Source: Antechinus flavipes (Eukaryota). From it: 64,000 nt of DNA. The notes under the pieces are model-generated. The model saw nothing but the letters and a program-made list of their open reading frames with translations, ran no database searches and was not told the DNA's origin. This document shows, one piece after another, positions 4,900-31,064 of this stretch (its first letter is position 1; every line of letters starts with the position of its first letter). A program made the position numbers and the translations under genes. The stretch is from NCBI RefSeq assembly GCF_016432865.1, contig NC_067403.1, positions 247,814,001-247,878,000 of the forward strand, given 5' to 3'.

Positions 4900-6365
4900 C
4901 TCCTCCAATCTCACACATTTCCTCTCTCTTCTCTCATACTTGCAGACCTGTGGATTACTTTTTTTTAAAAATTGGAATTAATCATCCACTGTGAGTTCCT
5001 TCTTTTCTCTTTGCATCTCAAAACTCCTTCATATTCTTCTTATTTTCCCCAGAATCTGATAAAAAGGTAACTCATTGTTTTTGACAAGACAAATTCCACC
5101 ATATATCTTCTTGATCCCAGCTCCTCCTATCTTTCCCAGAAGATTACAACCTCAATAATCTCTTAATGATTTTCAGCTTCTCCTTATCTCTTTGCTCCTT
5201 TCCTCCAGTCTTTTAACATATCTAACTCCCCCTATATTTAAAAAAAAATCATTAGACTTCACCACTCTCTTCAGCAATTGTCCTATTTCCCACCTCCCTT
5301 GCTCAACTATATTCCTAGAATACACTCACTGTTTCAGATACTTTTTTCTCAGTCATTTCTCAATCCTTTGCACTCTGGTTTCCATTTCCATTTCTCAATC
5401 CTTTGCACTCTGGTTTCCATTTCCAACCTCATTACTCAGCTGAAACTGCTCTCTACAATGTTACTAAAAATCTCTTAATTGATAAATCTGATTTTCTTTG
5501 TTAGTTCTCATCATTCTCCAACTAGCTGCTGAGTCTAACCTGTTGAATACCCTCTTCTCCTGTATACTTGTTTCTCTCTAGATTTTTTAACACCACTCTC
5601 TTTTACCTCTCCTTTTTAATTTCTTTTGCTTATCCACCATCCTGGTCATTCCCGCTACTTGGGAGTGTCACCCAAAGTTCTTTGCCAGGGTCCTTTTCTC
5701 TTTCTGCATTCTCTCATTCTGACTTCATCAACTCATAAATTTTTAAATGATCATTCTATGCCAGTGATTCTCAGATGTGGCTATATAGCTCCAATCTCTT
5801 TTCCGACTTTGAGTCTTGCATTACCAATTGCCTATTGGGCATGAAAAATGTATGTCAGGAAAATATGTCAAACTCAATGTACTCAAAAGAGAACTTCATC
5901 TTTCTCCATAACTCATTTCCTCTTCCAAACTTGCTTATATTCATTGATATTCTTTCTGCTTTCAAGATTCATAATCTTAGTCTTATCCTCTGTTCCTTAC
6001 TCTCCTTCTCCCTTATCTCACATGAATTCAATCACTTGCCAAATCTTGCTACTTCTATTTCCCCAATATCTCTTGCCCTTTTTATCTACTCACATGGTTG
6101 CCACATTGCCTAAGTATAGGTTCTCATCCGAATTAACCTAGATTAATACATCGCTCCCTTGGCTAGTTTCTCTGTCTTATCTTTCTATACTTCAGTGCAC
6201 CATCCATGATACTTGAAAGCAATTTTTCTTAAGTACAGATCTAACTGTGTCAGTTCCTTATTATACCAACTCCAGTGGCTTCCAATTGGCTCTCGAATAA
6301 AATACATTTTTGTCCTTAGCTTTTAAAGCCCTTCACAAACTCTGTTAAGTATTTGTTGAATTTAG
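4900..6365 (+). mobile_element. L2 LINE remnant; partial duplicate at 18955-20045
   Basis: C/T-rich L2-like body (tcaaactcaatgtactcaaaagagaac) ending agtatttgttgaat. Confidence 0.7.
5354..5423 (+). repeat. Perfect 2 x 35-bp tandem duplication
   Basis: catttctcaatcctttgcactctggtttccatttc twice; single copy at the paralogous site near 19094. Confidence 0.9.
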
Positions 6366-7259
6366 CAAATGACTCCTCCCCCAATTTTGACCACAATTTC
6401 CTTGTCTATCAAATGAGCATAAATTAATTGCTATTTTAGAATTCTCACACAACTCTGTGATTTCATGACCCATAATGCTACCCTTCTGTCTGGTGATCAA
6501 AGATCAATTTTATTCAAGCTAATGCTGCTTAGATTATGTATCATGGCACTAGTCAATGATACCACGAATTTGGTAAATGTTTGTTGAATCACACTGAACT
6601 GAAGGAAAGCATTGCAGGGACAAAGCTGTCCTGTACATGGACCAGTAGAGACTTTAAAACAAAGAATATTGGTAAAGAACCTGGGCTATTTCCCATTCCC
6701 TTAATAGCTAAACACTCTAGGGATTAGAGAGATTAGATTAGATGATGCAACATCTCAGATGATGTAAAAGATATCACAAAATGTAAAAAGACCTAGAGCA
6801 GAACTTTTTAACATTTTTTTTTTGAGTCATGCATCATGTCATTAGTTTGCTGAAGTGTATGGACTCTTTTTCAGAATGTTTTGAAATGAGCAAAATAAAA
6901 TAAACAGAATGGGAAAGGAAAACAATTTTGCTGAATTTAGATGTATTTTTCCTACTTTAATTCATTGACTCTATAAAATTGCTCCATGGATGCTCTATGA
7001 ACATCCTCAAGTCTGTGGATCCCAGATTAGGAACACCTATACTAGAGGAAAGCAGCCAGTACATTGAAAAACTTCTTTATGGAGGGTTTAGGGAAGGACA
7101 TGAAAAAGAATGACCAAGATGAGGTATACATATCTTATCTCTCCTCTCAATAAGGAGGGAATAAGACCCTTGAGGACAGCAGTTGTGGGTTGCCCTTTGT
7201 ACCTGTTTAGATGAGCATCTGCGAGGTAAAGAGGAAAGACTCCTGGCCAATAGGTAGTG

Positions 7260-7470
7260 AAGTGGAAAGAATACAGCACTTGGAATTAGTTTTGCCACTC
7301 ACTCTTATTAGCTAGGTGATTCTCAGCAAGACATTTAACTTCTATTTCAGTTTTCTCATCTGTAAAGTAAGAATAATAGTATTTATTTCATAATCATTGT
7401 GAGAACCAAGTGAATGAGCAAATGTAAGATGCTTTGCAAATCTTAAAACACTGTGTAAATGCTTACTAGT
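7260..7470 (+). mobile_element. MIR SINE (duplicate about 20945-21165)
   Basis: CORE sequence ttcagttttctcatctgtaaagtaagaataatag...gtgtaaatgct. Confidence 0.7.
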
Positions 7471-7513
7471 ACTACTGATATTTTTTGTACTACATCTACT
7501 AATCCTTCTCCTA

Positions 7514-7668
7514 NNNNNNNNNNNNNNNNNNNNNNNNNNNNNNNNNNNNNNNNNNNNNNNNNNNNNNNNNNNNNNNNNNNNNNNNNNNNNNNNNNNNNNN
7601 NNNNNNNNNNNNNNNNNNNNNNNNNNNNNNNNNNNNNNNNNNNNNNNNNNNNNNNNNNNNNNNNNNNN
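7514..7668. other. Assembly gap (155 N)
   Basis: Run of N. Confidence 1.
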
Positions 7669-7919: not shown

Positions 7920-8102
7920 CGTCTAGTCCTTACTTTCCTCATGTAATACCAAGGAATTGGATTAGATAATCTTTAAGGTCCTTTTCACTTCTAAGTCTAT
8001 GATGCTATGAGATCACAGTTCCCATACATTTAGCCATTTAGGTAAAGAACAGTAAAATCTGGCTCAAATAAATTTTTGACGATACTCTCTTTTCCATGAA
8101 AT

Positions 8103-8104
<2 letters not shown>

Positions 8105-8157
<53 letters not shown>
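8105..8157. repeat. (AT)n microsatellite
   Basis: Direct reading; absent from paralogous copy 2. Confidence 0.95.
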
Positions 8158-8164
<7 letters not shown>

Positions 8165-8866
8165 GAGATAAAAGTATCCTGTAACCTGATCCTGAGGGAA
8201 GCCACTTCATCATTATAGGGCAGATGCTTGGCCTATTTATGACTTTGTATCTTAAGAAATTTATGCTCCCTGGGTTTGGGGCTCTGAACTTAGGGTGGAT
8301 TAACCAAGGATGTGATCTATAGTCACTCTTAAAGAGTTTTAAGTCTATCACCCCTTTATTGTTACAGGTAAGAAAACTAAGAAAGAAAGTGGCACAGTGA
8401 ATGGAGTGTTTGCTTTAACAATCAAGAAGATCTGAATTCAATTTTGCCTTAGACTTTTACTAACTGTATGGCTATAGGTAACCTAACTAATCTCTCCAAA
8501 CCTCAGTTTCCTCATTTCTGAAAATAAAGTGATAGGACTGGATTACATGGCCTCTAAGGGAACTTTCAACTCTAACTGGAGTGGAATGAATTGTTGCCCA
8601 ACATCACATGGTAAATTAGGAGCAGAATTGTTTTTAGAACTCATATCACTTTGTTCCCATGTCTTTTCTGTACTTCAGCTTATGATTACTTGATGAGAAA
8701 AGACTGATATACTTGAGCCATTGAAGTATTATAGAAGAAGATCTTGAGAACTGGATCCAATGACAATAAGATGGGGGAGTATGTCCAGTTGGTCTACTTT
8801 TTTCTATCTTTAACATTTTCTTTATTATTGTGAACTTAATAACCATCAATAAAACAAATAATATTT

Positions 8867-9386: not shown

Positions 9387-10003
9387 ATATATAAAAAAGG
9401 AAATTGTATAAGAAATCTCAAATTTATGTAATGTTCTTCCAGAAACATTTACATGCACACATATATGTATATACACACATATATACAATTTAATGATTTT
9501 ATAAAGAATTTTTGTGTTCTCTTTTACAGTTCTCTTTAATTTCTTCTCTGAATTTGAAATATTTCCTTGATGGTCTACTGATGGCTAACTCTCCTAACCT
9601 TTCTTCTCCCCACCAAGAGAAATCTCTCCATTATAAATAGGAATCTAGCCAAAGGAAATGACGATATTATTCATATCTAGAAAAGTATATCTATAGATTT
9701 GATTGGTAGCAAAGATTCCTCTTGCCTCTAACCATAGTCCTGCATGAGGACCAAATTGATAGGCTGGTTTATACATATTTAAGATAGTCCCTGAAAAATC
9801 CATTAGGATGAAAAGGATATTGGAGTTGAAACCAAAACCCCTCAGTTGATTGTATTTTCTTGGCCAGACACTTCCTTTCCCTGGGATTGAGTTTTCTTCT
9901 TAAAAGGAGAGGGTTTAAACTGAATTAATTCTAGGGAACTTTCCTTGCTCCAAATTATGGGATCTCAAGTCATATAAGTAAATAAAAAGGAAGCAGTGAA
10001 ATT

Positions 10004-10710
10004 ACCTCTTCTTTCCAGCATGTCTAAATCCATCAGTCATCTGAGGGAAGAGCTGATCAGCAGTCTGCTTTTGTCCTGAGATGCTCCTGTGCCCAGCTAC
10101 AACAGAGCTCAATTGCTTTCTTTCTACTTTCTCATTGATTTAAATGGAGTGAGATTACATGATTTTCACAGGATATTATGAGTAACTAGAAAGAAGAGAT
10201 CCTGCCTACTGGATATTCCCTTTTCTTTTACTCTCTGGCTAGATCTAATAGAACTAAAGGTGGGAACAGATACTGGTATCCTTCTCTACCTGGGGTCTTA
10301 GAGTTGAGACAGCTTTAGTGTATAGTGATCATATGTACCATGAGTACTTTCTAGACTAAGATTCAGGATGCTTCTGCTGAATGAAAAAAGCCAACAAGGG
10401 TAATCCCTATTGACTGCAATCATAGTACAGTCATGTTTTTCTTTAATCAAGTTATTTACAGTCTTCTCTGGATTCTCTCTCAGAGGAATGGGTCCCTGAA
10501 GCAGAGGGTTTGGGGAAAACTTTGTGAATTGAGGACAACTCAGGTAAAGTTAATGGACATTCATATCTCTATAGGCTTATTCAGTGGCCATCCCAACAGG
10601 AGCCTGGACACTTGTAGAAGGGAATCTTGCTCTCTTATCACCTCTTTTTTTCTCTTCTCCATCAGGGATCTTAGTTGTCTTCTAGTGAGTTTCTCCAAGG
10701 TGAAATGGCT
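10004..10710 (-). promoter_or_regulatory. Module A copy 1: putative promoter and non-coding exon 1 of G1
   Basis: Donor GAG/GTAATT (GT at 10005-10004), O/E-like TCTCAGAGGA 10478-10487, HD site TAATGG 10551-10556. Homologous to four other copies. Confidence 0.6.
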
Positions 10711-11099
10711 AAACTACAATTTTATATAAATTTATGAAGAATGTAGCTAAAGAGAGATAAGCTTCAGTTTTGTCAAGTGGAAAATGCCAAAAAAATTCTA
10801 ATTTGTTCAAAATTATTTAAAGTGTTTGCCCCCATATGAAGCCCTGAACCAGGTACTGAAGATAGAAGGCTAAAATGTAACACAGTGGCTCCCTTCAAGG
10901 AGCGCCTAGTCTTTTGGAGAGTGAGAAAGGAAGAGATTTGCAAAGAGAAACACAATACTTTGATAGTGTCAAGGGGAGTATTCAAAGTACTCCAGAAAAA
11001 TTTGAGGGAAAGATTGCTTCCAGCTCAGAGGATCAGAAAAAGCTCCTGCAAGTAGGTAGCATCTAATAGAGGCCTTGGGAAATCAGTTAGTAATAATTG

Positions 11100-11330: not shown

Positions 11331-13407
11331 CTGCTTTCCTTAGCACGCCTGTTTGATGTGATTAGTTCCCAGGTGCCTTAATGGGGTACACAGAGAAAAT
11401 TGAGACCTGCTCAAAGTTTCCCAAATGCTGTTCTCTTTATTCTTTGGATATTCTCTGAAGCATTAGTAATTTTTTTTCTTGTCCTCATCCCTGGCAGCAT
11501 TTCTCAGGTGGGAAGCTGACTTCCTGCATTTCTTTTGGCTGCAGTGTCCAACAGAAGAATAAGCTCTTGACATCTCTATGCTTCTAAAAGATTGAGATTG
11601 TTACCCAGAAAATGCTCAGAGAAATCAGACCAACTCCATTTTCTATTTCAGATTCTCATGGAGTCCAACTAAACGCCTGTGAATTAAAAGTTTCATTCTC
11701 TCTAGTGCACTTGATGATCCTTGAATACAGTGAATGCATGAAAAAATGTTCTTCAGCTCTGAGTGTCTATCTGGGTGAACTATGATTTGGGGAATACTGG
11801 AAATCCAGACAGAGAAAACCAAGCTCTCCAATGGTAGGAGATTACATGGGTGGAGATTTGCCAGTTATTCTCCTTTCTCAGATTGTCCCTGATTCATTGT
11901 CTTTCTTTTTGGCTCCGATCAAAACTCATTTGTATCATATATTTCTCTGGTAAAGCTGTTGGCTTTCTAGGACAATATACAAAGTTTATTGAAGACATGG
12001 GCTGTCATTAAAAAATCAATACTTTTTTTTATATAAGTAAAACCAAATACTATTGATATTGAGCTCTTCCTTGTGATAAAAACAAACAACAACAACAAAA
12101 AAACCTATCATCCAAATCACTTCACTTGACAGCAAAACAATTTTCTATGCTTTTGAGAATACATTTTAAAAAAAAATCTTATATGACCAGCTCTTAGGTT
12201 ATCACCAGCTCTTATCACCTTACAAATAGCGGAATAATAATAAAATGAATGAATAATAATAAATCTTTATTTCTATTTATCTATGCATTTTGTATTTTTA
12301 ATTTGTATCCACAAGGATAGATTCTGTGTATTCTCTGATTTTTAAAATCTCTTTTTGTGTCAAACTCCAAGCTGTATACGTAGGAAATGTTTACTGTGTG
12401 TTTATACTTTAAAGGGTCTAGCACAGTGCTTGGACATTTGCAAGTGTCTTATACTTGTACAACGTATGAGAAAATGAATGAATGAATGAAGAGCGCTCCA
12501 AAACATCATAAAACACAATCAGAAAAACCTTTCTTCCTAAAGCTAACTATTATGGATAACAGCTGACATCAATCAGTCTAAGCTCTCTGAAACTAACCTA
12601 TATTTCTATATTGACAAATCACTTTCTTTCCCATTGTCTAATGCAATTTATGCATGGCCAATATAAAGGAGTTGGAACAGTTGTTGTTATACACTTATAA
12701 AAGTCAATTCATTTGCTGACTTGGAAGTGCTGGGATTTCCTATCATATGGAATGTAGATTGTACCTAACTATCTCCTTCTGGCCTCAGGCTGACTCCATT
12801 GTTTCTGAGAAGGAAAGAATATCAATTAAGGCTTGTTTTTGGAAAATCTGAGCATAATGGAAGGCATCTGTCTGGTTTTCTAGGGCAAACGTGTTTACAG
12901 TAACACAATAAATCCCAAAATTCCAATGGAAATAAAACAGCAGCAGTGGAGATCTTGGAGTGGCAGGGGAAGACTCAAAGGAATAAAAAGCCTTGATAAT
13001 GGATACTATTTATCATGCTGCATTCTCATCTTAAAACTTCCTTTATTTCCAAGCACGTTTATAGTTCAATAAAGTGTTTGCACATACATGTTTACATTTG
13101 TGTGTATGTGTACCTGTATGTGCATGCGTATCCTCATCTATATCTCTAGCTATTTATATGTATGTACCTGAGTCTTTGGATCCAACCAGATGCACTTGTG
13201 ATAAGGTAGTTTGCTTTGCTACCTGACATTGTTCATTGACAATGTGAGTGTTCTTCCAGTTTGTAGTAAAACCTGAACTTCTGGAGAATAAAGTTGGGTG
13301 AGACAAAGACTTTTTACTCTTTGTCTTGCCAGAAATTCAGGTGAAGAATTATTCCATCTTCATCCCAGAAGAAGCACCACAAATAATAATTTTACTTTTG
13401 CCTCCTG

Positions 13408-13809
13408 TGTAATGGGCTGAGGCTTGAATTGATGCACTGAGGTCCCAAGCATGTGAGGCTAAATAGTAATTGAACCATACTCTATTAATATATATGCTTG
13501 GAGAAAGCACCCACTCTTTGTGCAAGTCCTGATGTGTTGTATAGGAAATGATGATTTTGGTGGGTGGAGGCAGGGGAGTGGAGAGGGAAACAGAAAGAGA
13601 GACTGCTGGCTGGTGTCTTGTCACAGCTGCTCGCATTGCTATCGTGACCACCCTTCACCTCTGATCCCTCTTTGCTAGTTGGCTTCCTGTTATAGCTGCC
13701 CCTATTGCTATCGCAATCCTTCTTCACCTCTACTGAGAATAAAGATTGAAGATTTTTCCCTTAACCTGAATTCCTGACTCTGGCTGATTTTAAATATGTG
13801 GTCATCACA
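13408..13809 (+). mobile_element. ERV solo LTR a (402 bp)
   Basis: TGTAATGGG...CATCACA termini, perfect 6-bp TSD CTCCTG (13402-13407 / 13810-13815), AATAAA at 13738-13743, internal imperfect ~60-bp tandem repeat. Confidence 0.9.
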
Positions 13810-14591
13810 CTCCTGGATTCACTCTTTGTCTACATTTATTTTTATATGATAGGTAAAACCAAATATCACTACTATTGAGCTCTTCCTTGTGATAAACAAA
13901 ACAAAACAAAACAACAACAACAACAACAAAAACTATCACCCAAACGATTTCACTTGACAGCTTTGCTAGAATTTCTATATCAGGAGAGCTTTCTGCTTGT
14001 TGATACTTTTAAAGAAATCAAAGTAATGATCTTAAAAAAGAAGTTTCAATAGCCATACTTTGAAAATCATCAGTTGAGAACTGCCAACATACAACCTGAT
14101 GAGCCAAAAGCCTGCAGGTAGAACTGGAGTTGGGGGAGGGATAGTGACAAAAACATTGAGTACTTCATATGTTGATTATGGGAAGGCCTAATATCAAAGT
14201 AACTTCACCAAGTTCTTTTTTTAATCTTATCAGGTATAATAGATAGAACTGATTTTTTCCTGTAAGAAATCTGGGTTTGAATTTTATTTCTGGGACTTAC
14301 TTTCTCTGATATATTTAATAATAATGGTGTACTTAACATAAACTAGGGCACTTGTATAAAAAAAGAAAATAAAAATAAACTGAAACTCTTTTGGCTATAC
14401 TAAAAATAGAACTTCCACTGACCTTAATTTCATTCTCCTTTCAGGAATTGTCAGTAAATTCCATCAGAATTTAAATTCTTTGAAGGCAGGGACTATTAAA
14501 AAAAATTATCCTTCATGCTTAGTATAGAGTCTGTCATATAGTAAGCATGTAATAGATGTTTTTTAAGTTGATTAGTATTGAGTAGATCTGC

Positions 14592-15539
14592 CTATCTATT
14601 CCTGCTCACAACTTTTTTCAGAGCATTTTTGACATCCTTGTTCCTAAGGGTATAAATGATGGGATTAAGCAGTGGGGTTACAAAAGTATAGACCAAGGCA
14701 AGCATTCGATCCTCTTCTTCTCTGGTGCTTGATGGAGGACGGAAATAGACCAAACTGCAGCAGCCATATTGTATCAGGACTACTGTAAGATGGGAGGAAC
14801 AGGTAGAGAAGGCTCGCTGGCGACCCTCAGCTGAACGAATGTGCAAGATGGTGTTGGTTATGAAGACATAGGTGATGCAGATGAGCAGGAAAGGGGCGGT
14901 CAGTACAAGGATGCTTACCACATAGACAACAGCCTGGGGAATATGAGTATCAGCACAGACCAGCCTTAGAACAGGTGGTACATCACAGAAAAAGTGCTTG
15001 ATCACCCTGAGGTGTCCACAGAAGGGCAGAGTAAAGACCAGGCATGTGAGTTGCAAGGCAAGGAAAAGAGCCAGCATCAAGGAGCCACCTACCATCTGGA
15101 TACACAGCTTCTGGGTCATGATGAGAGTATAGTGTAAAGGATGACAGATGGCCACATAGCGGTCATATGCCATGACAGCCAATAGGAAACAGTCAGTCCC
15201 ACCAAGAGTTACAAAAAAGAACATTTGGATCCCACATCCAGCCAATGTGATGGGGTTTTGGGATCCAAAGATGTTGGAGAGCATCAATGGTACCAGAGTA
15301 GTGGTATAACAGATCTCCAGGAAGGATAGGTTGGACAGGAAGAAGTACATAGGGGTGTGTAAGGAGCTATGGGTGAACACAGCGCAGATGATGGCAGTGT
15401 TTCCACAGAGAATCATCATATAAAGAAGGAGAAAGAAGCAGAAGAGGAGGGCCTGGATCCTGGGGGAAGTAGTGAACACTTGGAACACAAATTCAGTGGG
15501 GCCAGACTGGTTGATCTGGAGAGTGTAGGGAGAAGACAT
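14592..15539 (-). CDS. Olfactory receptor G2, OR10Q1-like paralogue (315 aa)
   Basis: Intact ORF with all OR motifs. Splice acceptor tttctatctttctttggcag lies 7 nt upstream of the ATG. Confidence 0.93.
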   Translation of the reverse strand: MSSPYTLQINQSGPTEFVFQVFTTSPRIQALLFCFFLLLYMMILCGNTAIICAVFTHSSLHTPMYFFLSNLSFLEICYTTTLVPLMLSNIFGSQNPITLAGCGIQMFFFVTLGGTDCFLLAVMAYDRYVAICHPLHYTLIMTQKLCIQMVGGSLMLALFLALQLTCLVFTLPFCGHLRVIKHFFCDVPPVLRLVCADTHIPQAVVYVVSILVLTAPFLLICITYVFITNTILHIRSAEGRQRAFSTCSSHLTVVLIQYGCCSLVYFRPPSSTREEEDRMLALVYTFVTPLLNPIIYTLRNKDVKNALKKVVSRNR

Positions 15540-17107: not shown

Positions 17108-17244
17108 CTTGTAGAGACTCTCTTCCAGGATTATAACAACAACAGCGGTAGCAGCAGCACAACAGCAATAATAAAGATAAAGATACTTTTATGAGCTTCT
17201 CTGACTGTGTGCATGGCTTATCAGTGGTTCTACAAGTGCCATAC
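17108..17244 (-). other. Candidate 137-nt 5'UTR exon of G2 containing a 17-aa uORF
   Basis: Acceptor gctttaaag (17246-17245) after a long pyrimidine tract. Donor AAG/GTAAGA (17107-17106). Confidence 0.45.
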
Positions 17245-18200: not shown

Positions 18201-18264
18201 ATTGATTGATTGCTATGTGCTTGCTATAGCTATGGTAGTATATGAGATAAAAAGGAAGAACTGA

Positions 18265-18480: not shown

Positions 18481-21186
18481 AAATATGCCAGAGATTTCTG
18501 AGTTTAATATCATCATTTTACAGGTGAGAAAATTGAAGACCAGAAAGTGTAAATGACATATTCTGGTCGTGAAGTGAATTCCATAGCAGGGATTGATTAG
18601 AACCTAGGGCACCTTAATCCATTAATCTTTCTTCTACACTACTCAGTTGATATCTCTCTTAATAATCAACCAAGAAGCATCATTATATCATTGTTTCTCT
18701 TCCATTCTTGAAGAGGACCATGACATCATTAAAGTGATTCTATGACATACAAGTGAATAAAACTACCATAAACCAGACATAGTACTAGATCTTAGAGATT
18801 TAAATCTAAAGAATGAAATGAACTTTATTGATAAGGAGCTGATAATTAATAGAGGAGAGAAGAAATAGATGAAATGTATGTACTATCAATACAAACTGAA
18901 TTAATATACACTTATTAAATATAAAGTCATTGGGAAAGGAGAGTCTGATAATTTCTAATTCTTCCTCATATTAAAAAAATTCACTAGATTTCACCACTTT
19001 TTTCAACAATGTCCTATTTCCCAGATCCTTTGCTCAACTATATTCCTAGAATAAACTGTCTAAACTCACTGTTTCAGATACTTTTTTCTCAATCATTTCT
19101 CAATCCTTTGCACTCTAGTTTCCATTTCCAAACTCATTACTCAGCTGAAACTGCTCTCTACAATGTTACCAAAAAATCTCTTAATTGATAAATCTGATTT
19201 TCTTTGTTAGTTCTCATCATTCTCCAACTAGCTGCTGAGTCTAAGCCTGTTGAATACCCTCTTCTCCTGGGTACTTGTTTCTCTCTAGGTTTTTTTTACA
19301 CTTGATGTCTTACCTCTCTAATTACACCTTTTAAATTTCTTTTGCTTATTCATCATCCTGGTCCTGTCCCCTATCTGGAAGTGTTACCCAAAGCTCTTTG
19401 CCAAGTTCCTTTATTCTTCTTTCTGGATTTTATCTTTTCTGACTTCATCAGCTCATAAATTTTTAAATGATCATTCTATGCCAGTGATTCTCAGATGTGG
19501 ATGTATAGCTCCAATCTCTTTTCTGACTTTGAGTCTTGCATTACCAATTGCCTATTGGGCATTAAAAATGTATGTCAGGAAAATATGTCAAACTTAATGT
19601 ACTCAAAACAGAACTCTATTTTTCCTCATTACTCATCCTCTTCCAAACTTGCTTATATTCATTGAAATCATTTCTACTTTCAAGATTCATAATCTTAGGG
19701 TTATCCACTATTCCTTACTCTCACTCTCCCTCATCCCACATACTCAATCACTTGCCACATCTTGCTACTTTTAGCAATATTTCTTGCCCTTTTTTACCCT
19801 ACTCACATGGTAGATGGCTCTCATTACAGTTAGCCTAGATTAGTATATGACTCTCTCAATTGGTTTCTCTGTCTTAAGTCTCTCTATGCTTCAGTTCACC
19901 ATCCATGATACATGAAAACAATTTTTCTTAAGTACAGATCTAACTGTGTCAGTTCTACTATATCAACTCCAGTGGCTTCCAACTGGCTCTTGTCTTTAGC
20001 TTTTAAAGCCCGTTACAAACTCTGTTAAGTAGCTGTTGAATTTAGCAAATGACCCTCCCTCCTCCCCCCAATTCTGACACACAGTTTCCTTGTATATCAA
20101 ATGAGGGTGAATTAGTTGCTATTTTAGAATTCTCATAAAACTCTGTGATTTCATGACCCGATGCTTCCATTCTGTCTGCTGACCAAAGATCAGTTTTATT
20201 CAAGCTATTGCTGCCTGGATTATGTATTATGGCACTAGTCAATGATATCAAGAATTTGACAAATGCTTGTTGAATCACACTGCACTGAAAGAAAGTATTG
20301 CAGGGACAAAGCTGTCCTGTATATAGGTTAGTAGTGACTTTAAGACAAAGAATATTGATAAAAAACCTTGACTATTTCCATTCCTCTAATGGCTAAACAA
20401 TCTTGGAGGGATTAGATGATATGATGTGACATTTCAGGTAATATAAAAGAAATCAGAGATTGTGAAAATACATAGAGCAGAACTGTTTTTTTTTTTTTTT
20501 TTTTTTGAGTCATGGATTATGTCAACAGTTTGGAGAAGTGTATGAACTCTTTCAGAATGTTTTGAAATGAGCAAAATAAAATATACAGAATGGGAAAGGA
20601 AAACAATTTTGCTGAATTTAAATGTATTTTTCTCGCTTAAATTCATTGACTTTATGAAATTGCTTCATGGATTCTCTTTGGACACCCCTGAATCTGTGAA
20701 TCCTAGATCAGGCACACCTGTGCTAAAGGAAAGCAGTCAATACATTGAATAGCTTCTCTATGGAGGGTTTATGGGGATGACATGAAGAAGAATGATTAAA
20801 ATGAGGTATAGATATCTTATCTCTTTTCTTTGCAAGAAGGAAATAAGATGCTTGAGGACAGCAGTTGTGGATTGCCATCTGCACCTGTATAGATGAGCAT
20901 CTGTGAGGTAAAGAGGAAGGAATCCTGGCAGCTAGGTAGTGAAATGGATAGAATATAGCACTTGGAATTGGGAAGACCCAAGTTCAAATCCTGCCTCTTA
21001 CTCTTATTAGCTAGTTGGTTCTCAGCAAGTCATTTAACCTCTTTCAATTTCCTCATCTGTAACATAAGAATAATGGCATTTATTTCATTATCATTGTGAG
21101 AATCAAGTGAATGAGCAAATATAAGATGCTTTGCAAACCTTAAAACACTATGTAAATGCTTACTAGTATGACTAACAATTTTTGTG

Positions 21187-21223
<37 letters not shown>

Positions 21224-21278: not shown

Positions 21279-23045
21279 TTTATCATTTTTACTATCAGAA
21301 TACATGGGTATTCCAGATCTCTCTACCTGAGTAACCATGAGTAAGATCATTTCTCTTTTTCTTGCTTTCCTCATGTAACAGCAAGGAATTGGATTAGATA
21401 ATCTTTAAGGTCCTTTTCACCACTAAGTCTATGATGCTATGAGATCCTGTTCCATGCATTCATTTAGCGATTTAGGTGAAGGATTGTGAAATTTGGTTTA
21501 AATAACTTTCTGAGGATAATCTCTTTTTCAGGAATTATAGAGATGAATATGTCCTGTAGCCTGCTCCTGAGGGATCCCACTTCATCATTATAGGGCAGAT
21601 GCTTGGCTGTGACTTAAGAAATTGAGATTCCTTGGGTTTGAGGCTCTAAGCTTAGGGCGAATTAACAAAGGAGAAGGGAGCACTAAGAATTGGCTGATAT
21701 ATTTGACCACAAAAGTCGGAGGACTTTTCTGGTTCTGTGGTATTATGAAGTCTGTCTGAGTTAACTTAATCATTGAAGGAACAAACATTAATTGAATATC
21801 TATTATGTGCCCAGCAGTATATCTAGTGCTATCTAGAGGATACAGAGAAATGGGAAAAATGGGCCCTGCTCTTAAGTAACTGGAGTCATTGAATGTCAGA
21901 GCTGGAAGGGACCTTAAAGAGTATTAGGTTTATCACCCTTTTAATTTTACAGATGAGAAAAATGAGGCACATGGCACAGGAGTGTTTCATGTAACAGTCA
22001 GAAAGACCTGAATTTGAATCTTGGCTTAGACTTTTACTAGCTATGTGGCTACAGGCGAACTAATCTCTCCAAGCCTCAAAGGGATAGGACTGGATTGTCC
22101 TCTAAGGGAATGTTCAGTTATAACTGGAGTGGAATGAATTATTGCCCAATATGACATGGCAGTTTAGTAGAAGAATTATCTTTAGAACTCATATGTCTTT
22201 ATTCGCATGTCTTTTTTGTACTTCAATTTGAGCCATTGAAACACATGATAGATGGAGATCTTGAGAATTGGATCCAGTGACAATAAGATGGGAGAGTATG
22301 TCTAATTGGTCTACTTTTTTATATATTTAACATTTATTATTGTGAACCTAATAACCATCCATAAAACAAATAATATATAAAAAGAAAATTGCGTAAAAAA
22401 TCTTGAATTTATATAACACTCGTTCAGAAACATTTATATGTACACAAATATATATATATATATATATTCACACATATATAACAATTTAATGATTTATAAA
22501 AATTTTTGTGTTCTCTTTTACATTTCTCTTTAATTTCTTCTCTGAATTTGAAATATTTCCTTGATGTTCTTTTTTCTTCATGTTACCTATCATTGCCCAT
22601 TAATCTACTGACTGATAACTGTCCCCCATGTCTCCAAGAAGTTTCCTTCAAGAGAAACCTTCTTCCTTTATTACAAATATGGACAGTCTATCCAAAGAAA
22701 TGAACATATTATTCATATCTAAGAAAGTACATCTATGGATTTGATTGATATCAAAGATTCTTGTTGCTTCTAACCATAGTCCTGCATGAGGTCCAAATAG
22801 GCTGGCTTATACATATTTCTATGATAACCCCTGAAAAGTCCATTAGGATGAAAAGAACATTAGAGTTGAATGCCAAACCCCTCAGTCAATTATATTTTCT
22901 TGGCCAGACATTTCCTTTCACTGGGATTCAGTTTTCTTCTTTGTAAAAGGAGAAGGTTTAGACTGAATTAATTCTAAGGGACTTTCCCTGCTCCAAATCC
23001 TGAGATCTCAAGTTAATAAGTAAATAAAAAGGAAGCAGTGAAATT

Positions 23046-23750
23046 ACCTCTTCTTTCCAGCATCTCTGAATCCATCAGTCATCCGAGGGAAGAGCTGATC
23101 AGCAGTCTGCTTTGTCCTGAGATGCTCCTGTGCCCATCTACAACAGAGCTCAATTACTTTCTTTTTACCTTCTCACTGATTTAAATGGAGTGAGATTACA
23201 TGATTTTCAAAGGGTATTATGAGTAACTAGAAAAAAGAGATGCTGCCTAATGAATATTCCCCTTTCTTTTACTCTCTGGCTAGGTCTAATAGAACTAAAG
23301 GTGGGAATAGATAATGGTATCCTTCTCTACAAGGGGTCTTAGAGTTGAGATAGCTTTAGTGTAGAGTGGTCATATGTACCATGGACACTTTCTAGACTGA
23401 GATTCAGGATGCTTCTGCTGAATGAAAAAAGCCAACAAAGGTAATCCCTGTTGACTCCAATCATAGTCTAGTCATGTTTTACTTTAATCAGGTTATTTAC
23501 GGACTTCTCTGGGCTCTCCCTCAGAGGAATGGGTCCCTGAAGCAGATGGTTTGGGGAAAACTGTGAATTGAGGACAATTCAGGTAAAGCTAATGGACATT
23601 CATATCTCTATAGGCTTGTTCAGTAGATATCCCAACTGGAGACTGAAGACCAGTAGAAGGGAATCTTGCTCTCTTTATCACCTCTTTTTTTTTTTTCTCC
23701 CCTCCATCAAGAATCTTAGTTGTCTTCTAGTTAATTTCTCCAGGGAAAAA
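23046..23750 (-). promoter_or_regulatory. Module A copy 2 (duplicate of the G1 module) now upstream of G2
   Basis: Donor GAG/GTAATT (23047-23046), CCTCAGAGGA 23519-23528, TAATGG 23590-23595, second O/E TCTCCAGGGA 23737-23746. Confidence 0.58.
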
Positions 23751-25701
23751 TGGCTAAACTACAATTTTATATCAACTTATGAAGAATGTGGCTAAAGGGA
23801 GTTAATTTTCAGTTTTGCCAAGTGGAAAAATGTCAAAAAATTCTAATTCATCCAAAATGATTTAAAGTGTTTGCCATATATAAAGCATTGAACTAGATAC
23901 TGAAGATAGAAGGATAAAATGTAATAGAGTGGGCTCCCCTTAAAGAGCTCCTACTCTTTTGGAGAGTGAGAGAGGAAGAGATTTGCAAAGAGAAACACAG
24001 TACTTTGATAGTGTCAAGGGGAATATTCAAAGTACTCCGGAAAAATTTGAGGGAAAGATTGCTTTCAGCTCAAAGGATCAGAAAAAGTTCCTGCAAGTAG
24101 GTAGCAACTGATATAGGCCTTAGGAAATCAATTAATAATAACTGTAGTTCACATTTACATAGCACTCTAAGATTTGCAAATCATTGTAATCTTTTGTCTT
24201 ATTTGATCCTATCAACAACCTTGTGAAGTAGACACTATTATTTCCATTTCAGTGATAAGAAAATTGAGACACAAAGAGTTAAGTGACTTGTCAAGAGTTG
24301 CACAATTAGGAAATATCTTAGACTGGATTTGAACTAAGGTTTTCATGATGACATACATAGCATTCTACCCACTGGACAAGCAAGCTGCTTTCCCTAGCAT
24401 GCCTATTTGACGTGATTAGTTCCCAGGTGCCTTAACACATTGGGGTGGACAGAGAAAATTGAGATCTGTTCACAGTTTCCCAAATGCTGTTCTTTTTATT
24501 CTTTGGATATTCTCTGAAGCATTAGTAATTTTTTTCTTGTCCTCATCCCTGGCAGCATTTCTCAGGTGGGAAGATGACATCCTGCATTTCTTTTGGCTGC
24601 AGTGTCCAACAGAAGAAAAAACTCTTGATATCTTCCTCTCTCTACCCAGAAAATGCTCAGAGACATCAGAACAATTCTATTTTGTATTTCAGATTCTCTT
24701 GGACCCCTCACTAAACTCTCTGTGAATTAAGGGTTTCATTCTCTCTGGTGCTCTTGTGTCTCATGATCCTTGAGTACAGTGAATACATGAAAAAAAATGT
24801 TATTCAACTTTGAGTGTCAATCTGGGTGAAGTATGATTTGGGGAATACTGGAAGTCCAGACAGAGAAAACCAAGCTCTCCAGTGCTAGGAGATTACATGG
24901 GTAGAGATTTGCAAGCTTTTCTCCTTTCTCAAATTGTCCTTGACTTGTCTTTGCTCCTTCAAAAACCATCTGTTTCATAATATGTCTCTGGTAAAGCTGC
25001 TGGACTTCTAGGACAAAGTACAAAGCTTGTTGAAGGCATAGGCTGTTATTAAAAAATCAAAACTTTTTTTTTTTTTTTACCTTAGGTAAAACCAAATACC
25101 ATTGATATTGAGCTCTTCCTTATAATTAAAAAAAAAAAACAACAATCACCCAAAGCTTTTCATTTGACAGCAAAACAATTTTCTATGCTTCTGGGACTAC
25201 AATTTTTTTTTATCTTATATGACCATCGCTTAGTTCATATCCTTACAAATAGTAGGAAAATCCTGCAGGTAGAACTGATATTGGGGGAGAGGTAGAGACA
25301 GACACATTTAATACTTTATATGTTGACTATAGAAGGCCTTAACATCAAAGCAATTCCACAAGCTCTTTATCTTATCAGGCATAATAGATAGAGCTGATTT
25401 TGCTATCAGAAAACTGGGTCTGAATTTTGTCTCTGAAATTTACTACCTCTGATATAAAGATAATGGTTGTGCTTGCCATAGACTAAGATACTTGTTTAAA
25501 AAACGAAATAAAACAAAAATTGTAAGTCTTTTTGCTACACTTAAAATATAACTCCAATGACCCTAATTTCTTCTCTACTTTCAGGAACTGTCAGAAAACT
25601 CCATTAGAATTTTAATTCTTGTTGGCAGGGACTATTAAAAATTATTCTTCATAAGCATGTAATAAATGCTTTTAAAATTGATTGATATTAAATAGATTTG
25701 A

Positions 25702-26649
25702 CTATCTATTCATGCTCACAACTTTTTTCAGAGCATTTTTGACATCCTTGTTCCTAAGGGTATAAATGATGGGATTAAGCAGTGGGGTTACAAAGGTATA
25801 GACCAAAGCAAGCATTCGATCCTCTTCTTCTGTGGTACTTGATGGAGGACGGAAGTAGACTAAACTGCAGCAGCCATATTGTATCAGGACTACTGTAAGA
25901 TGGGAGGAACAGGTAGAGAAGGCTCGCTGGCGGCCCTCAGCTGAACGAATGTGCAAGATGGTGTTGGTGATGAAGACGTAGGTGATGCAGATGAGCAGGA
26001 ATGGGATGGTCAGGAGAATGATGCTTACTACATAGACAACAGCCTGGGGAATATGAGTATCAGCACAGTCCAGTCTTAGTACAGGTGGTACATCACAGAA
26101 AAAGTGCTTGATCACCCTGAGGTGCCCACAGAAGGGCAGAGTAAAGACCAGGGATGTGAGGTGCAAAGCAAGAAAAAGAGCCAGGATCAAGGAACCACCC
26201 ACCATCTGGATACACAACTTCTGGGTCATGATGAGAGTATAGTGTAAAGGATGACAGATGGCCACATAGCGGTCATATGCCATGACAGCCAATAGGAAAC
26301 AGTCAGTCCCACCGAGAGTTACAAAAAAGAACATTTGGATCCCACAGCCAGCCAAAGTGATGGGGTTCTGGGATCCAAAGATGTTAGAGAGCATTAATGG
26401 TACCAGAGTAGTGGTATAACAGATTTCCAGGAAGGATAGGTTGGACAGGAAGAAGTACATAGGGGTGTGTAAGGAGCTATGGGTGAACACAGCCCAGATA
26501 ATGGCAGTGTTCCCACAGAGAATCATCATATAAAGAAGGAGGAAGAAGCAGAAGAGGAGGGCCTGGATCCTAGGGGAAGTGCTGAACACTTGGAACACAA
26601 ATTCAGTGGGGCCAGACTGGTTGATCTGGAGAATGTAGGGAGAAGACAT
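25702..26649 (-). CDS. Olfactory receptor G3, OR10Q1-like paralogue (315 aa), sister of G2
   Basis: Intact ORF, 12 aa differences from G2 by manual alignment, with the same acceptor position. Confidence 0.93.
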   Translation of the reverse strand: MSSPYILQINQSGPTEFVFQVFSTSPRIQALLFCFFLLLYMMILCGNTAIIWAVFTHSSLHTPMYFFLSNLSFLEICYTTTLVPLMLSNIFGSQNPITLAGCGIQMFFFVTLGGTDCFLLAVMAYDRYVAICHPLHYTLIMTQKLCIQMVGGSLILALFLALHLTSLVFTLPFCGHLRVIKHFFCDVPPVLRLDCADTHIPQAVVYVVSIILLTIPFLLICITYVFITNTILHIRSAEGRQRAFSTCSSHLTVVLIQYGCCSLVYFRPPSSTTEEEDRMLALVYTFVTPLLNPIIYTLRNKDVKNALKKVVSMNR

Positions 26650-28298: not shown

Positions 28299-28447
28299 AT
28301 TGTAGAGACTCTTTTCCAGGATTGTAACAACAGCAGCAACAGCAGCAGCAGCAGCACAGCAACGACAGCAATAATAAAGATAAAGATACTTTTATGAACT
28401 TTTCTGACTATGTACATGGCTTACCAGTGGTTCTGCAAGTGCCATGA
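28299..28447 (-). other. Candidate 149-nt 5'UTR exon of G3 containing a 17-aa uORF
   Basis: Acceptor gcttttatag (28449-28448). Donor AAT/GTAAGA (28298-28297). Paralogous to 17108-17244. Confidence 0.45.
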
Positions 28448-29059
28448 CTATAAAAGCAACAATTGTAAGAGAAGGAAAAATGAAGAAAGAGATTAAAGAT
28501 AAAATACAAGAAAGAAGGTTAAGAAAGAAAGCTGTTAACTGCTTCCAGAAAAATAAGTATAAGAGAAGTATGTATGGAATAATTTTACATATTTGTATAT
28601 ACACGTGTGTGTGCTCTTGTGTGTTGTATGGTTAGGTATTTCTAGAGTAGGGGAGAGTGGAAAAATGATGGAGCTCAAGCATCATCTTTTGCAGAGAGCT
28701 CTTCATGATCCCACCAAGAGCTAGTATCTTCTCTCCCAAACTAATTTCTGTTTAAATAATTGGAATATATTTATATTTGAGATCATATATTTATAGAAAC
28801 ATATTATACCTATTTATTTGTTTATACTTGTTTCCTCTTTTGGATGCAAGCCACTTGAGAGTAGGGATCATTTCATTATTTGTACTTGTATCTTCTGTTC
28901 CCAGAATAGTACTTACCATAGTATAAACAGATGGTGCTACTTGTTTATTGTAAAGGTAAAGGGTTGGATAAGACCTCTGATCTTCCTTGAATGTTCTAAA
29001 TCTAAGATCCTATGATCTCTTGGGATCAAATTTTCCTCCCAAACAGTAGACTAACTGAT

Positions 29060-29410
29060 TGGATTGTGAACTAGGGACTCTGGATTTAGGATTTCCTAAT
29101 AGAACCATTTTTTAAAACAGATTAAAGAGATATGGGTCATGTCATGCCCCAAGGGAAGCTGTTTCACCATTGCAACCCCTAGTTTGGGTTGTTCAGTTCA
29201 ACCCAGGCAGCTGGACTTAGTGCTGTTTGCTAGGGTTGTAGAATCTGAGACTACAAGGGATGGTCTATATAGGGGAAAAGAAGTATTCAGGATTGGATCA
29301 TAATATGACTCCTTCCTCTCAAGTATCTGATGGATCAAAGTTGGAGTTCAGCCTGGAGCTGTCTGGGCTACCTGAAGAGCTCTCCATTGATTGAGCCAAC
29401 AAATATTTAT
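29060..29410. promoter_or_regulatory. Module B, copy upstream of G3
   Basis: GGGACTCTG 29074-29082, EBF-type CCCCAAGGGA 29147-29156, CAGCTG 29208-29213. Confidence 0.45.
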
Positions 29411-31064
29411 TGCCTGACTGCTATGTGCCTGCCATAGCTATGGTACTGTATGGGATAAAAAGGAAGAACAGATGTGCCCTGAGAATTCAGAATCATAGTA
29501 TGTTAGAGCTTGGAGAGACCTTAGAGCACAGAATGTTAGAGCTGGGAAGGAACCTGGAAAAGGGCATGTTAGAACTGGAAGAATACAAGGTCAAAGCAAG
29601 GAGGGACCTTAGAAAAGGGAATTTCAGAATAAGAAGGAACTTTTAAAATAAAATCTCAATGTGATAGAGACCTTTAAACTTAAAGGATGAACTGTATCAC
29701 AGCTAAAATATATCTTAGAGATCTCCGAATTTAATATCATCATTTTATAGGTGAGAAAATTAAAGATCAGAAAGAGAAAATGACATACTCCAGTTGTGAA
29801 TTCCATAGCACAGATTGATTAGAACCCAGGAAACCTTAATCCATCATTCTTTCTTCTACACTACTCAGTTGGTATAATCTCTTATTAATCAACCAAGAAG
29901 CATTATTATTATATATTGTTGTTTGTCCTTCATTCTTGAAGAGGACCATGAGAAGTGATTCTATGACATGCAATTGAATTGAACCTACTTCAAACCAGAC
30001 ATAGTACTAAATCCTAGAGGTACAATTACAAATAAACTTTTTTGATGAGGTGCTGACAATCTAACAGAGGAGAGAGCAAATAAATATAAAATGTATGTAG
30101 CATTAATACAAACTGAATTAATATACATTTTTATTAAATATAAGGTAATTTAGAAAGGGAAAGCCCAATAGTTTGGAGGAATAAGGAAAAGCTTTTTGCA
30201 GAAGACTGTGCTCAAACTGGGTCATAAAGGAAGAGAAAGATTCTATGAGGTGGAATTGAGGAGAAAGTTCTTTCCAAGCATGTAAGGTAGCTTATGCAAA
30301 GATGCAGAGATGGTAGAAGTGTAAGGGACAGAGAGAAGACCAGTTTGGCTGGACAAGAATCCAGAAGGAAGAACAATGGATTATTCTAAACTTTTGGAAA
30401 CAACTGCAATATTGGGCAATAGAAAGCAAGTCAGTTGATACTGGATTTAGGTCAAGAACCAGATCCTGAACTAATTCTGGATGTCAGCATTTTTTAAAAA
30501 GTAAAATGGGATTTTGTGTTCAATATCCTTAAAGATAAGTGCCACTTCTCATAAGACTGAAATCTCTGACATCCCTCCTCCTTCCTGAGGACCAGGAGTT
30601 GGGGCTATTGACAAAATGACTCAAGCTGATGCCAGAAAAACTTAGTCTAGAGAAAAAGGTCCTGGATTTGGAGTCAGAGAATCTTGGATTCAATCTTGAA
30701 TCTTCTTGGGCAAGTCATTATGGAATTATGGATCTGTAGGATTGAGGCTTTCTAGTCAAAATCCTCTCATTATAGAAGAGGAAATTAAGATCTAGAATGG
30801 GTAAGTGATCTAAGATTATAGGATCATTGACCTAGAGCTGGAAGAGACCTAAAAAACCAGTTAGTGCAAAAACCTTCATTGTACAAATGAGAAACTGACA
30901 CTCAGACAGGACAAATGATTTGCTCAGTTACAGAGGTCATGAGTATGAGAGGAGATATTTGAACCAAGGTCCTGTGACCAAGGAGCCCATATTCTTCTCT
31001 CTATGAATCTCAGTTTTCTTCTCTGCAAAATAAATGGGTTGGATGTAAACAATAATCTTCCCTT

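What the first reader, a model, noticed from the sequence alone, without database searches (positions are those of the whole stretch)
5222..30174. Duplication A swapped promoters: G2 sits under a copy of the OR10Q1 (G1) promoter
Seen: the duplicated unit runs from mid-L2 at 5222 through module A copy 1 and G2 to 18954, with an essentially blunt junction at 18954/18955 (at most 1 bp microhomology; the flanking L2s are in opposite orientation, so not NAHR). It therefore copies G1's putative promoter with the neighbouring gene's CDS. Result: G1-A1-G2-[junction]-A2(=A1 copy)-G3-A3. Inference: G3 kept the ancestral promoter, while G2 is a chimeric transcription unit with a G1-type exon 1 spliced across the junction. 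OR promoters influence zone and choice frequency, so near-identical receptors G2 and G3 (12 aa differences) may be expressed in different patterns.
Basis: partly seen in the sequence, partly recalled or inferred. Interest (0 to 1): 0.72.

Follow-up and report, generated by a model that had tools for sequence, protein, structure and literature searches.

The report
Old staggered duplication re-pairs smell-receptor genes
In a marsupial smell-receptor cluster, an ancient tandem duplication really did place one receptor gene downstream of a copy of its neighbour's upstream module, but no RNA data exist to show that this module is a promoter or that the gene uses it.

Summary
The structural observation holds. 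Window 5218-18954 and 18955-30174 are two direct tandem copies. Non-coding divergence is about 0.13-0.15. There is one end-to-start junction and no long homology at the breakpoints.

The genome is Antechinus flavipes. All genes are OR10Q1-type olfactory receptors on the minus strand. The same layout occurs in Tasmanian devil and dunnart, and the dunnart aligns straight through the junction. Dromiciops has a single, unduplicated gene. The event therefore predates crown Dasyuridae and is not an assembly artefact.

G2 and G3 differ by 12 residues, with dN/dS 0.12, so both have stayed functional.

"Module A" exists in five same-orientation copies, one 5-8 kb upstream of each receptor gene in the window whose upstream region is covered. 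Each copy keeps a splice donor, and each coding exon has a conserved acceptor. In trees A2 groups with A1, while the G2 coding sequence groups with G3.

The functional reading is untested, because no RNA run holds the locus. A3 is clearly constrained, A2 only in sub-blocks, and A1 not at all. G2 also keeps 3.4 kb of its own upstream DNA. A second G1-type element, B'2, also lies upstream of G2.

The same reader noted a similar "swap" for duplication B in this window (s1-189930), which has not been checked.

The parts
592..1554 (-). G1, the OR10Q1 orthologue (320 aa). The listed ORF runs to 1575, but the conserved acceptor (AG 1564-1563) lies inside those 7 extra codons, so the likely start is the ATG at 1554.
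5218..5222 (.). Left breakpoint: homology to copy 2 begins here. The sequence to the left (X) has no counterpart at the junction.
7514..7668 (.). Assembly gap (N) in copy 1, in non-coding DNA. The flanks are collinear with copy 2 and with the devil orthologue. Not filled.
7936..8236 (-). B'1, the remnant of the G1-type module B upstream of G1. Its core (homeodomain-like plus O/E-like site) is at 8190-8215 and is followed by a (TA)n run. The core is mutated in the devil and replaced by a microsatellite in the dunnart.
9831..10733 (-). Module A copy 1 (A1), 8.3-9.2 kb upstream of the G1 start. The putative exon ends at 10006, with GT at 10005-10004. No detectable constraint among the three dasyurids.
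12167..14106 (.). 1.9-kb segment downstream of G2 that is missing from copy 2. It is present in the devil, the dunnart and (in part) Dromiciops, so it is ancestral and was later deleted from copy 2.
14592..15539 (-). G2, an intact OR10Q1-like receptor (315 aa). The splice acceptor AG is at 15548-15547 after a pyrimidine tract, so the coding exon starts at 15546.
17108..17244 (-). AG and GT are present in Antechinus and the devil, but the donor is lost in the dunnart G2 copy and deleted in the dunnart G3 copy. A weak candidate.
17650..18465 (-). Module B copy on the G2 side (B2). It contains MIR-like SINE debris plus an O/E-like/TA-rich core. In B2 the O/E-like site is degenerate and the core carries indels in all three dasyurids. 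Evolves at the neutral rate.
18942..18954 (.). Duplication junction: the end of copy 1 joined to the start of copy 2 (best placed at 18954|18955). The dunnart aligns straight through it. The devil has a later deletion of about 350 bp spanning it.
21383..21919 (-). B'2, the G1-type module B copied upstream of G2. Its homeodomain-like plus O/E-like core (21565-21590) lies in a 58-nt block (21550-21607) with 1 variable site among the three dasyurids.
22872..23778 (-). Module A copy 2 (A2), 7.3-8.2 kb upstream of the G2 start and 1.9-2.8 kb downstream of the G3 stop. The putative exon ends at 23048, with GT at 23047-23046. Blocks 23043-23110 and 23442-23546 are very conserved.
25702..26649 (-). 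G3, an intact OR10Q1-like receptor (315 aa) with 12 aa differences from G2. The acceptor AG is at 26658-26657.
28853..29697 (-). Module B copy on the G3 side (B3). Its O/E-like site is better preserved than the one in B2.
30174..30175 (.). Right breakpoint: the end of copy 2. The sequence beyond it is the ancestral upstream DNA of the G2/G3 ancestor.
31561..32440 (-). Module A copy 3 (A3), 4.9-5.8 kb upstream of G3 and outside the duplicated unit. The donor follows 31712. It has a perfect O/E palindrome near its 5' end and a homeodomain-like block. Under purifying selection in dasyurids (0.61 of the background rate).

Best explanation
**Shown (probability at least 0.95).**
- This is a cluster of OR10Q1-type class II olfactory receptor genes of Antechinus flavipes, all on the minus strand.
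- Before the living dasyurids diverged, and after the split from Dromiciops, a non-homologous or microhomology-mediated tandem duplication copied a unit of about 11-13.7 kb.
- The breakpoints were out of register with the ancestral 'module A - module B - coding exon' repeat. The left break fell between the G1 coding exon and its upstream modules. The right break fell between module B and module A of the G2/G3 ancestor.
- As a result G3 keeps the ancestral distal module A3. G2 keeps 3.4 kb of its own upstream DNA, including B2. Beyond the junction, G2 has copies of G1's two upstream modules, B'2 at 5.8-6.4 kb and A2 at 7.3-8.2 kb.
- Both genes have stayed intact under purifying selection.

**Inferred (the confidence figure applies to this part).**
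- Module A is the family's distal promoter plus non-coding first exon.
- G2 is transcribed from the G1-type copy A2, possibly helped by B'2. An exon ending at 23048 would be spliced across the junction to the acceptor at 15547.
- If so, G2 and G3 encode near-identical receptors behind unrelated upstream modules, while G1 and G2 encode different receptors behind sister modules.
For: **Structure and age**
- The duplication, junction and breakpoints are mapped.
- The layout is collinear in the devil and the dunnart, and the dunnart reads through the junction.
- A tree of the within-unit upstream DNA gives two three-species clades with 100/100 support.
- Dromiciops has one gene, with a G1-type A downstream and A3 upstream.

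**Discordant trees**
- A2 groups with A1 and the Dromiciops G1-type A. The G2 coding sequence groups with G3.

**Both genes stayed in use**
- dS is 0.153 and dN/dS is 0.12.
- Intact orthologues of G2 and of G3 exist in three species.

**Module A as a gene part**
- There are five copies in the window, all in gene orientation. One lies 4.9-8.3 kb upstream of each receptor gene whose upstream region is in the window.
- A GT donor is kept in all 14 copies examined in four species. In the G1-type copies a second, pre-existing donor survives the 7-bp deletion of the first.
- Every coding exon has a pyrimidine tract and an AG 5-8 nt before its ATG.

**Constraint**
- A3 has 66 variable sites in 877, a ratio of 0.61 to background (p = 6e-6), lower than all 41 background windows.
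- Of 14 very conserved 58-nt non-coding blocks in about 31 kb, four are in A3, two are in A2 (the donor block and an O/E-like/TA-rich block) and one is in the B'2 core. None is in A1, B2 or B3.

**Module B seems dispensable**
- It is absent upstream of the intact Dromiciops gene.
- B'1 is destroyed in the dunnart although G1 is intact there.
- B2 and B3 diverged at the synonymous rate, 0.158.
Against: - No transcript evidence of any kind: no RNA run holds the locus, and no read-level test was possible.
- A2 as a whole evolves at the background rate (ratio 0.95). A1, the supposed promoter of a well-conserved G1, is at 1.06.
- Sites invariant among deep paralogues are not protected in A1 or A2.
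- Deep paralogue distances of module A (0.6-0.7) are about equal to synonymous distances.
- The low A1-A2 distance (0.07-0.10) is explained by gene conversion, since the dunnart A1 and A2 group together. It is not evidence of constraint.
- The conserved blocks in A2 could belong to the 3' untranslated region of G3, which ends 1.9 kb away. The block holds a conserved ATTAAA.
- G2 kept 3.4 kb of its own upstream DNA with module B2, whose paralogues have the homeodomain-like + O/E-like + TA-rich look of an OR promoter.
- Published work states that OR transcription start sites cannot be predicted reliably from sequence (PMC3247239).
Confidence: 0.45

Rival explanations
1. G2 never changed promoter. 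The working promoter of the G2/G3 ancestor lay within the 3.4 kb that was duplicated with the coding exon (module B or nearer). G2 uses B2 and G3 uses B3. A2 and B'2 are bystanders, or at most rarely used alternative starts.
For: - Module B paralogues share a homeodomain-like site, an O/E-like site with an invariant TCCCT in 13 copies, and a TA-rich box about 25-30 nt further on. This is the known OR promoter layout (PMC3247239).
- Its distance from the ATG, 2.2-2.9 kb, is ordinary for OR genes (my own knowledge).
- B3 shows a weak trend towards protecting deep-invariant sites (OR 0.57, p = 0.07).
- A2 is neutral overall.
Against: - B2 and B3 diverged at the synonymous rate (0.158 against 0.153) and evolve at the background rate in dasyurids.
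- The O/E-like site of B2 is degenerate and its core carries indels in all three species, with an excess of variable sites (23 of 121).
- Much of module B is MIR-like SINE debris.
- Dromiciops has an intact orthologue with no module B upstream.
- This reading leaves the constraint on A3 unexplained.
Confidence: 0.3
2. Module A is not a promoter or first exon at all. It is an old piece of the ancestral repeat unit that survives for another reason: gene conversion, membership of the 3' untranslated region of the upstream neighbour, enhancer-like activity, or a locally low mutation rate. On this reading, what drives G1-G3 is simply unknown.
For: - Deep distances in module A are about equal to dS.
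- A1 and A2 are neutral overall.
- There is a clear gene-conversion signal in A1/A2.
- In duplication B the module A block is again the most similar non-coding piece, 94.9% against about 90%, as expected of a conversion hot spot.
- A2 lies within reach of the G3 3' end and contains a conserved ATTAAA.
- Nothing like A or B is detectable upstream of mouse Or10q1.
Against: - There is one copy per gene, always in the same orientation and at a similar distance.
- The donor is retained in 14 of 14 copies, and a back-up donor survived after the deletion.
- A3 is 6.6 kb or more from the next gene upstream and is still the most constrained non-coding stretch of the region.
- Every coding exon needs an upstream donor, because each has a conserved acceptor.
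Confidence: 0.2
3. The duplication is an assembly artefact, such as a falsely expanded or mis-joined repeat.
For: - There is an assembly gap inside copy 1.
- Read-level confirmation of the junction could not be obtained.
Against: - The copies differ by about 13-15%, far too much for a collapsed or duplicated haplotype.
- The same order of genes and modules is found in two devil assemblies and one dunnart assembly, and the dunnart carries the same junction.
- Distinct G2 and G3 orthologue proteins are annotated in three species.
Confidence: 0.01

Closest known systems
Tandem duplications that create chimeric or re-paired genes when the breakpoints fall inside two neighbouring transcription units (described in Drosophila and in human structural variants; from my own knowledge)
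   Same: A single direct tandem duplication with non-homologous breakpoints. The junction puts the 5' part of one unit in front of the 3' part of the neighbour. The outer copies stay intact.
   Different: Both breaks fall in presumed 5' introns, and the whole protein lies in the last exon. Any chimera therefore changes only the promoter and leader, not the protein. The event is about 1.4 times as old as the Antechinus-Sminthopsis split, and both genes were kept.
Mammalian OR gene structure and promoters: an intronless coding exon, spliced non-coding 5' exons, and AT-rich promoters enriched in O/E and homeodomain sites, with TATA boxes in a subset (PMC3247239)
   Same: A conserved acceptor lies just before each ATG. 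The upstream modules have donors, O/E-like and homeodomain-like sites, and TA-rich boxes. The sequence is AT-rich.
   Different: No start site is mapped here. Two competing modules (A and B) carry such motifs. The motifs are short enough to occur by chance.
Gene conversion and concerted evolution among clustered OR paralogues (known for the family; also noted elsewhere in this genome, s1-193731 and s1-189961)
   Same: Within-species paralogues are closer than between-species orthologues in parts of the unit: the module A core, and the 5' half of the G2/G3 coding sequence in the devil and the dunnart.
   Different: Here one conversion tract covers a non-coding upstream module shared by two genes that encode different receptors (G1 and G2).

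Membership tests
Olfactory receptor, family 10 subfamily Q (class II OR, rhodopsin-type GPCR) | Full-length match to the olfactory receptor 7TM profile (Pfam 7tm_4) in an uninterrupted ORF of about 310-330 aa | tested here: met
   G1, G2 and G3 match PF13853 over positions 1-278/280, with E-values of 1e-50 to 1e-52. The ORFs are intact.
Olfactory receptor, family 10 subfamily Q (class II OR, rhodopsin-type GPCR) | Closest named relatives are OR10Q1 or OR10Q1-like proteins | tested here: met
   All of the best 120 named hits are OR10Q1 or 10Q1-like. G1 is 316/320 identical to devil OR10Q1.
Tandem segmental duplication by a non-homologous or microhomology mechanism | Two adjacent direct copies, collinear over their length, joined end-to-start at a single junction | tested here: met
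Tandem segmental duplication by a non-homologous or microhomology mechanism | No extended direct-repeat homology between the two ancestral breakpoints | tested here: met
   nhmmer and sensitive blastn find no significant direct match between 4400-6000 and 29400-31000. Short microhomology cannot be scored after about 13-15% divergence.
Tandem segmental duplication by a non-homologous or microhomology mechanism | Real in the organism, not only in one assembly | tested here: met
   The same architecture is found in the devil (two assemblies) and the dunnart.
OR promoter plus non-coding first exon (as claimed for module A) | A mapped transcription start in olfactory tissue | not testable with these tools
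The gene calls are coding sequence only.
OR promoter plus non-coding first exon (as claimed for module A) | A splice donor able to pair with the acceptor in front of the coding exon | tested here: met
   The donor is kept in all 14 module A copies of four species. Acceptors are conserved before every ATG. This is sequence-level evidence only.
OR promoter plus non-coding first exon (as claimed for module A) | Conserved O/E and homeodomain sites close to the start site | tested here: inconclusive
   O/E-like and homeodomain-like blocks are among the best-conserved parts of A. Module B has them too, and without a start site their position cannot be judged.
OR promoter plus non-coding first exon (as claimed for module A) | Purifying selection relative to neighbouring non-coding DNA | tested here: inconclusive
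   A3 passes (ratio 0.61, p = 6e-6). A2 passes only in two sub-blocks. A1 does not pass.
Promoter-swapped (chimeric) transcription unit | Transcripts that join the foreign 5' exon to the gene's coding exon | not testable with these tools
   No RNA data. I built no joined spliced model.

The most novel reading that the evidence does not exclude
For roughly 1.4 times the age of the Antechinus-Sminthopsis split, G2 has been expressed from a G1-type promoter (A2, perhaps with B'2). G3, its near-identical sister, uses the unrelated ancestral module A3. Gene conversion keeps the G1 and G2 upstream modules alike.

This would be a natural, long-running promoter-swap experiment on olfactory receptor choice, conserved in at least three dasyurid genera. 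One receptor type would sit behind two promoters, and one promoter type would sit in front of two receptors.
Probability: 0.4. Interest if true: 0.55.

Novelty: new member of a known kind. Interest (0 to 1): 0.4.

Why it matters
Which olfactory neurons choose a receptor gene, and how often, depends partly on the gene's promoter. Evolution rarely offers clean comparisons. If the inference holds, this locus supplies two:
- Near-identical receptors (G2 and G3) behind unrelated upstream modules.
- Different receptors (G1 and G2) behind sister modules.

Both pairs are conserved in three genera, one of which (the fat-tailed dunnart) is, to my knowledge, kept as a laboratory colony.

If the inference fails, the locus is an ordinary old tandem duplication in a receptor array. 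It would then serve mainly as a caution that per-gene repeated non-coding modules are not necessarily promoters.

Tried and rejected
**RNA and read evidence**
- The look-up of sequencing runs listed only DNA-type holders.
In my local working copy I replaced them with N.

**Annotation**
- Gene ranges returned for Antechinus, the devil, the dunnart, Dromiciops and mouse cover the coding sequence only, so they say nothing about 5' exons.

**More outgroups**

**Deep conservation**
- Profiles of modules A and B, and their best blocks, find nothing convincing upstream of mouse Or10q1. There was one marginal O/E-like hit.

**Constraint at deep-invariant sites**
- The test was not significant for A1, A2, B2 or B'2.

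**Readings I rejected**
- The low A1-A2 distance is not evidence of constraint, because trees and distances point to gene conversion.
- Module B's conserved 'core' alone is not evidence of function. Its best-conserved stretch is a MIR-like SINE core, and an invariant 5-mer is expected by chance several times in 800 columns.

**L2 identity of the breakpoints**
- Pfam finds no LINE domains in ORFs at either breakpoint, and no repeat library is available.

**Steps I left out**
- The N gap was not filled.

Full report
**What the window is.** The exact G2 and G3 proteins are found on chromosome CM028222.1 of Antechinus flavipes assembly GCA_016432865.2. Six long ORFs, all on the minus strand, match the olfactory receptor profile PF13853. 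Their named relatives are all OR10Q1 or OR10Q1-like. G1 is 316/320 identical to devil OR10Q1 when read from the ATG at 1554. The seven extra codons of the listed ORF overlap the conserved splice acceptor.

**The observation.**
- Self-comparison shows a direct tandem duplication in three collinear blocks: 5218-7501 with 18951-21198, 9614-12167 with 22649-25206, and 14106-18954 with 25257-30174.
- Non-coding JC distance is 0.133. dS between G2 and G3 is 0.153.
- Homology of the unit's end runs to 18954 (matching 30174). Homology of its start is clear from 18955 (matching 5223).
- Using the dunnart and devil sequences as well, the crossover can only be placed within 18942-18954. A few bases of microhomology therefore cannot be excluded.
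- The two ancestral breakpoints share no significant direct similarity. Whether they are L2 elements could not be tested.
- G2 and G3 differ by 44 nt, 33 of them at third codon positions, and by 12 aa.

**The assembly gap.** The gap at 7514-7668 lies in non-coding DNA of copy 1. Its flanks keep the order and orientation seen in copy 2, with spacing of 193 against 111 bp. They are also collinear with the devil orthologue. I did not fill it.

**Age, and whether the duplication is real.**
- Protein clusters separate G2 orthologues (devil, dunnart, antechinus) from G3 orthologues of the same three species. Single bilby and Dromiciops proteins fall with G3.
- The devil and dunnart loci are collinear with window 1.8-36 kb. 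The dunnart aligns straight through the junction. The devil has a later deletion of about 350 bp over it.
- A tree of the upstream DNA inside the unit gives two three-species clades with 100/100 support. The coding-sequence tree puts the dasyurid G2+G3 clade next to the single Dromiciops gene.
- Non-coding distances are 0.065 (antechinus-devil), 0.098 (antechinus-dunnart) and 0.133-0.153 (copy to copy).
- The event is therefore about 1.4-1.6 times as old as the antechinus-dunnart split and younger than the split from Dromiciops. It is not an assembly artefact.
- dN/dS of 0.12 shows that both genes stayed in use.

**The repeat unit.**
- Module A has five same-orientation copies: 9831-10733, 22872-23778, 31561-32440, 48701-49539 and 57563-58403. 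Each lies 4.9-8.3 kb upstream of a receptor gene.
- A second module, B, lies between A and the coding exon. Its copies are B2 (17650-18465), B3 (28853-29697), two copies in the second cluster, and G1-type copies B'2 (21383-21919) and a remnant B'1 (7936-8236).
- The ancestral unit was therefore A - B - coding exon. The duplication's right break fell between B and A of the G2/G3 ancestor. Its left break fell between the G1 coding exon and its B'/A.
- Hence G2 has B2 of its own, then the junction, then G1-type B'2 and A2. G3 keeps A3.
- Dromiciops confirms this: its single gene has a G1-type A and B' downstream, and the A3 orthologue upstream past the equivalent of 30174.
- In the module A tree, A2 groups with A1 and the Dromiciops G1-type copy (100/100), and A3 stands apart.

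**Is module A a promoter or first exon?**

Evidence for:
- There is one copy per gene, in a fixed orientation.
- A GT donor is present in all 14 copies from four species. In the G1-type copies of dasyurids a 7-bp deletion removed the usual donor, but a second donor 10 nt on is kept in all six. That second donor was already present in Dromiciops.
- Every coding exon has a pyrimidine tract and an AG 5-8 nt before its ATG, so each needs an upstream donor.
- A3 has 0.61 of the background rate of variable sites among the three dasyurids (p = 6e-6), below every one of 41 background windows.
- Of the 14 most conserved 58-nt non-coding blocks in about 31 kb, four are in A3 and two are in A2. The two in A2 are the donor block 23043-23110 and an O/E-like/TA-rich block at 23442-23546. 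One more is the B'2 core. None is in A1, B2 or B3.

Evidence against:
- A2 (0.95) and A1 (1.06) are neutral overall.
- Sites invariant among deep paralogues are not protected in A1 or A2.
- Deep distances in A roughly equal dS.
- The low A1-A2 distance reflects gene conversion. The dunnart A1 and A2 group together, and within-species distances fall below orthologue distances.
- A2 lies only 1.9-2.8 kb beyond the G3 stop, and its conserved block holds a conserved ATTAAA. It could serve the G3 3' end, although a conserved AATAAA at +1.2 kb makes that unnecessary.

**Module B as the rival.**
- Its paralogues share a homeodomain-like site, an O/E-like site and a TA-rich box. This is the layout known to be enriched at OR start sites (PMC3247239).
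- However, B2 and B3 diverged at the synonymous rate and evolve neutrally.
- The B2 core is degenerate in all three species.
- Much of B is MIR-like debris.
- B is absent upstream of the intact Dromiciops gene, and B'1 is lost in the dunnart although G1 is intact there.
- B'2, the copy now upstream of G2, is almost invariant over 58 nt. Only 1.8% of such windows are as conserved.

**Verdict.**
- The structure and its history are established.
- The most economical functional reading is that G3 kept the ancestral distal module and that G2, having lost it, relies on the G1-type copy. I put this at about 0.45.
- Against it stand use of G2's own proximal DNA (0.3) and the reading that module A is not a promoter at all (0.2).
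- The literature warns that OR start sites cannot be predicted from sequence (PMC3247239). I sent those letters to no search tool afterwards.
- The kind of event, a tandem duplication that re-pairs the 5' part of one unit with the body of its neighbour, is known. This is a well-preserved example in a receptor family where promoters matter.

Noticed in passing
window 15103-15539 with 26213-26649, and the devil and dunnart orthologues (L004/L007, L005/L008): In the devil and the dunnart, the 5' half of the G2 and G3 coding sequences is closer within a species (K 0.014-0.020) than between orthologues (0.035-0.045). This suggests lineage-specific gene conversion between G2 and G3. Antechinus shows it less (0.045).
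   Followed up: partly
window 10101-10600 with 23142-23639: The core of module A has been homogenised between A1 and A2. Paralogue K is 0.07-0.10, against 0.15 in the flanks. The dunnart A1 and A2 group together in the tree (94/94).
   Followed up: yes
window 48439-49829 with 57302-58692: In the second duplication the block that holds module A is again the most similar non-coding piece (94.9%, against about 90% in the flanks). This points to constraint or to a conversion hot spot. It bears on the neighbouring note s1-189930.
   Followed up: partly
L006 7992-8786 (Dromiciops): Dromiciops has an extra, deeply diverged module A copy only 1.2-2.0 kb upstream of its single G2/G3-type gene, in the interval where dasyurids have module B. 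One lineage has replaced the content of this interval.
   Followed up: partly
window 18700-19054 and 2920-5080: The devil lacks about 350 bp spanning the duplication junction, and 2.16 kb of the G1 upstream region that antechinus and the dunnart share. These stretches are therefore dispensable for G1 and G2 in the devil.
   Followed up: partly
window 8065-8150: A long (TA)n microsatellite has grown out of the TA-rich box of B'1. In the dunnart, (TA)n/(TG)n repeats have replaced the whole B'1 core.
   Followed up: yes
window 40994-41899: This receptor ORF matches only positions 1-213 of the 280-position OR profile and has an unrelated C-terminus. It is probably a frameshifted pseudogene. BLAST also shows a more decayed OR remnant at about 39076-39995.
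   Followed up: no
window 1555-1575: The longest ORF of G1 starts 7 codons before the likely true start. The conserved splice acceptor (AG 1564-1563) lies inside those codons, and orthologues are annotated at 320 aa.
   Followed up: yes
window 36427-36504 and 62566-62635: Near-identical simple-repeat-like stretches (up to 100% over 58 nt) recur at these two places. Not examined.
   Followed up: no
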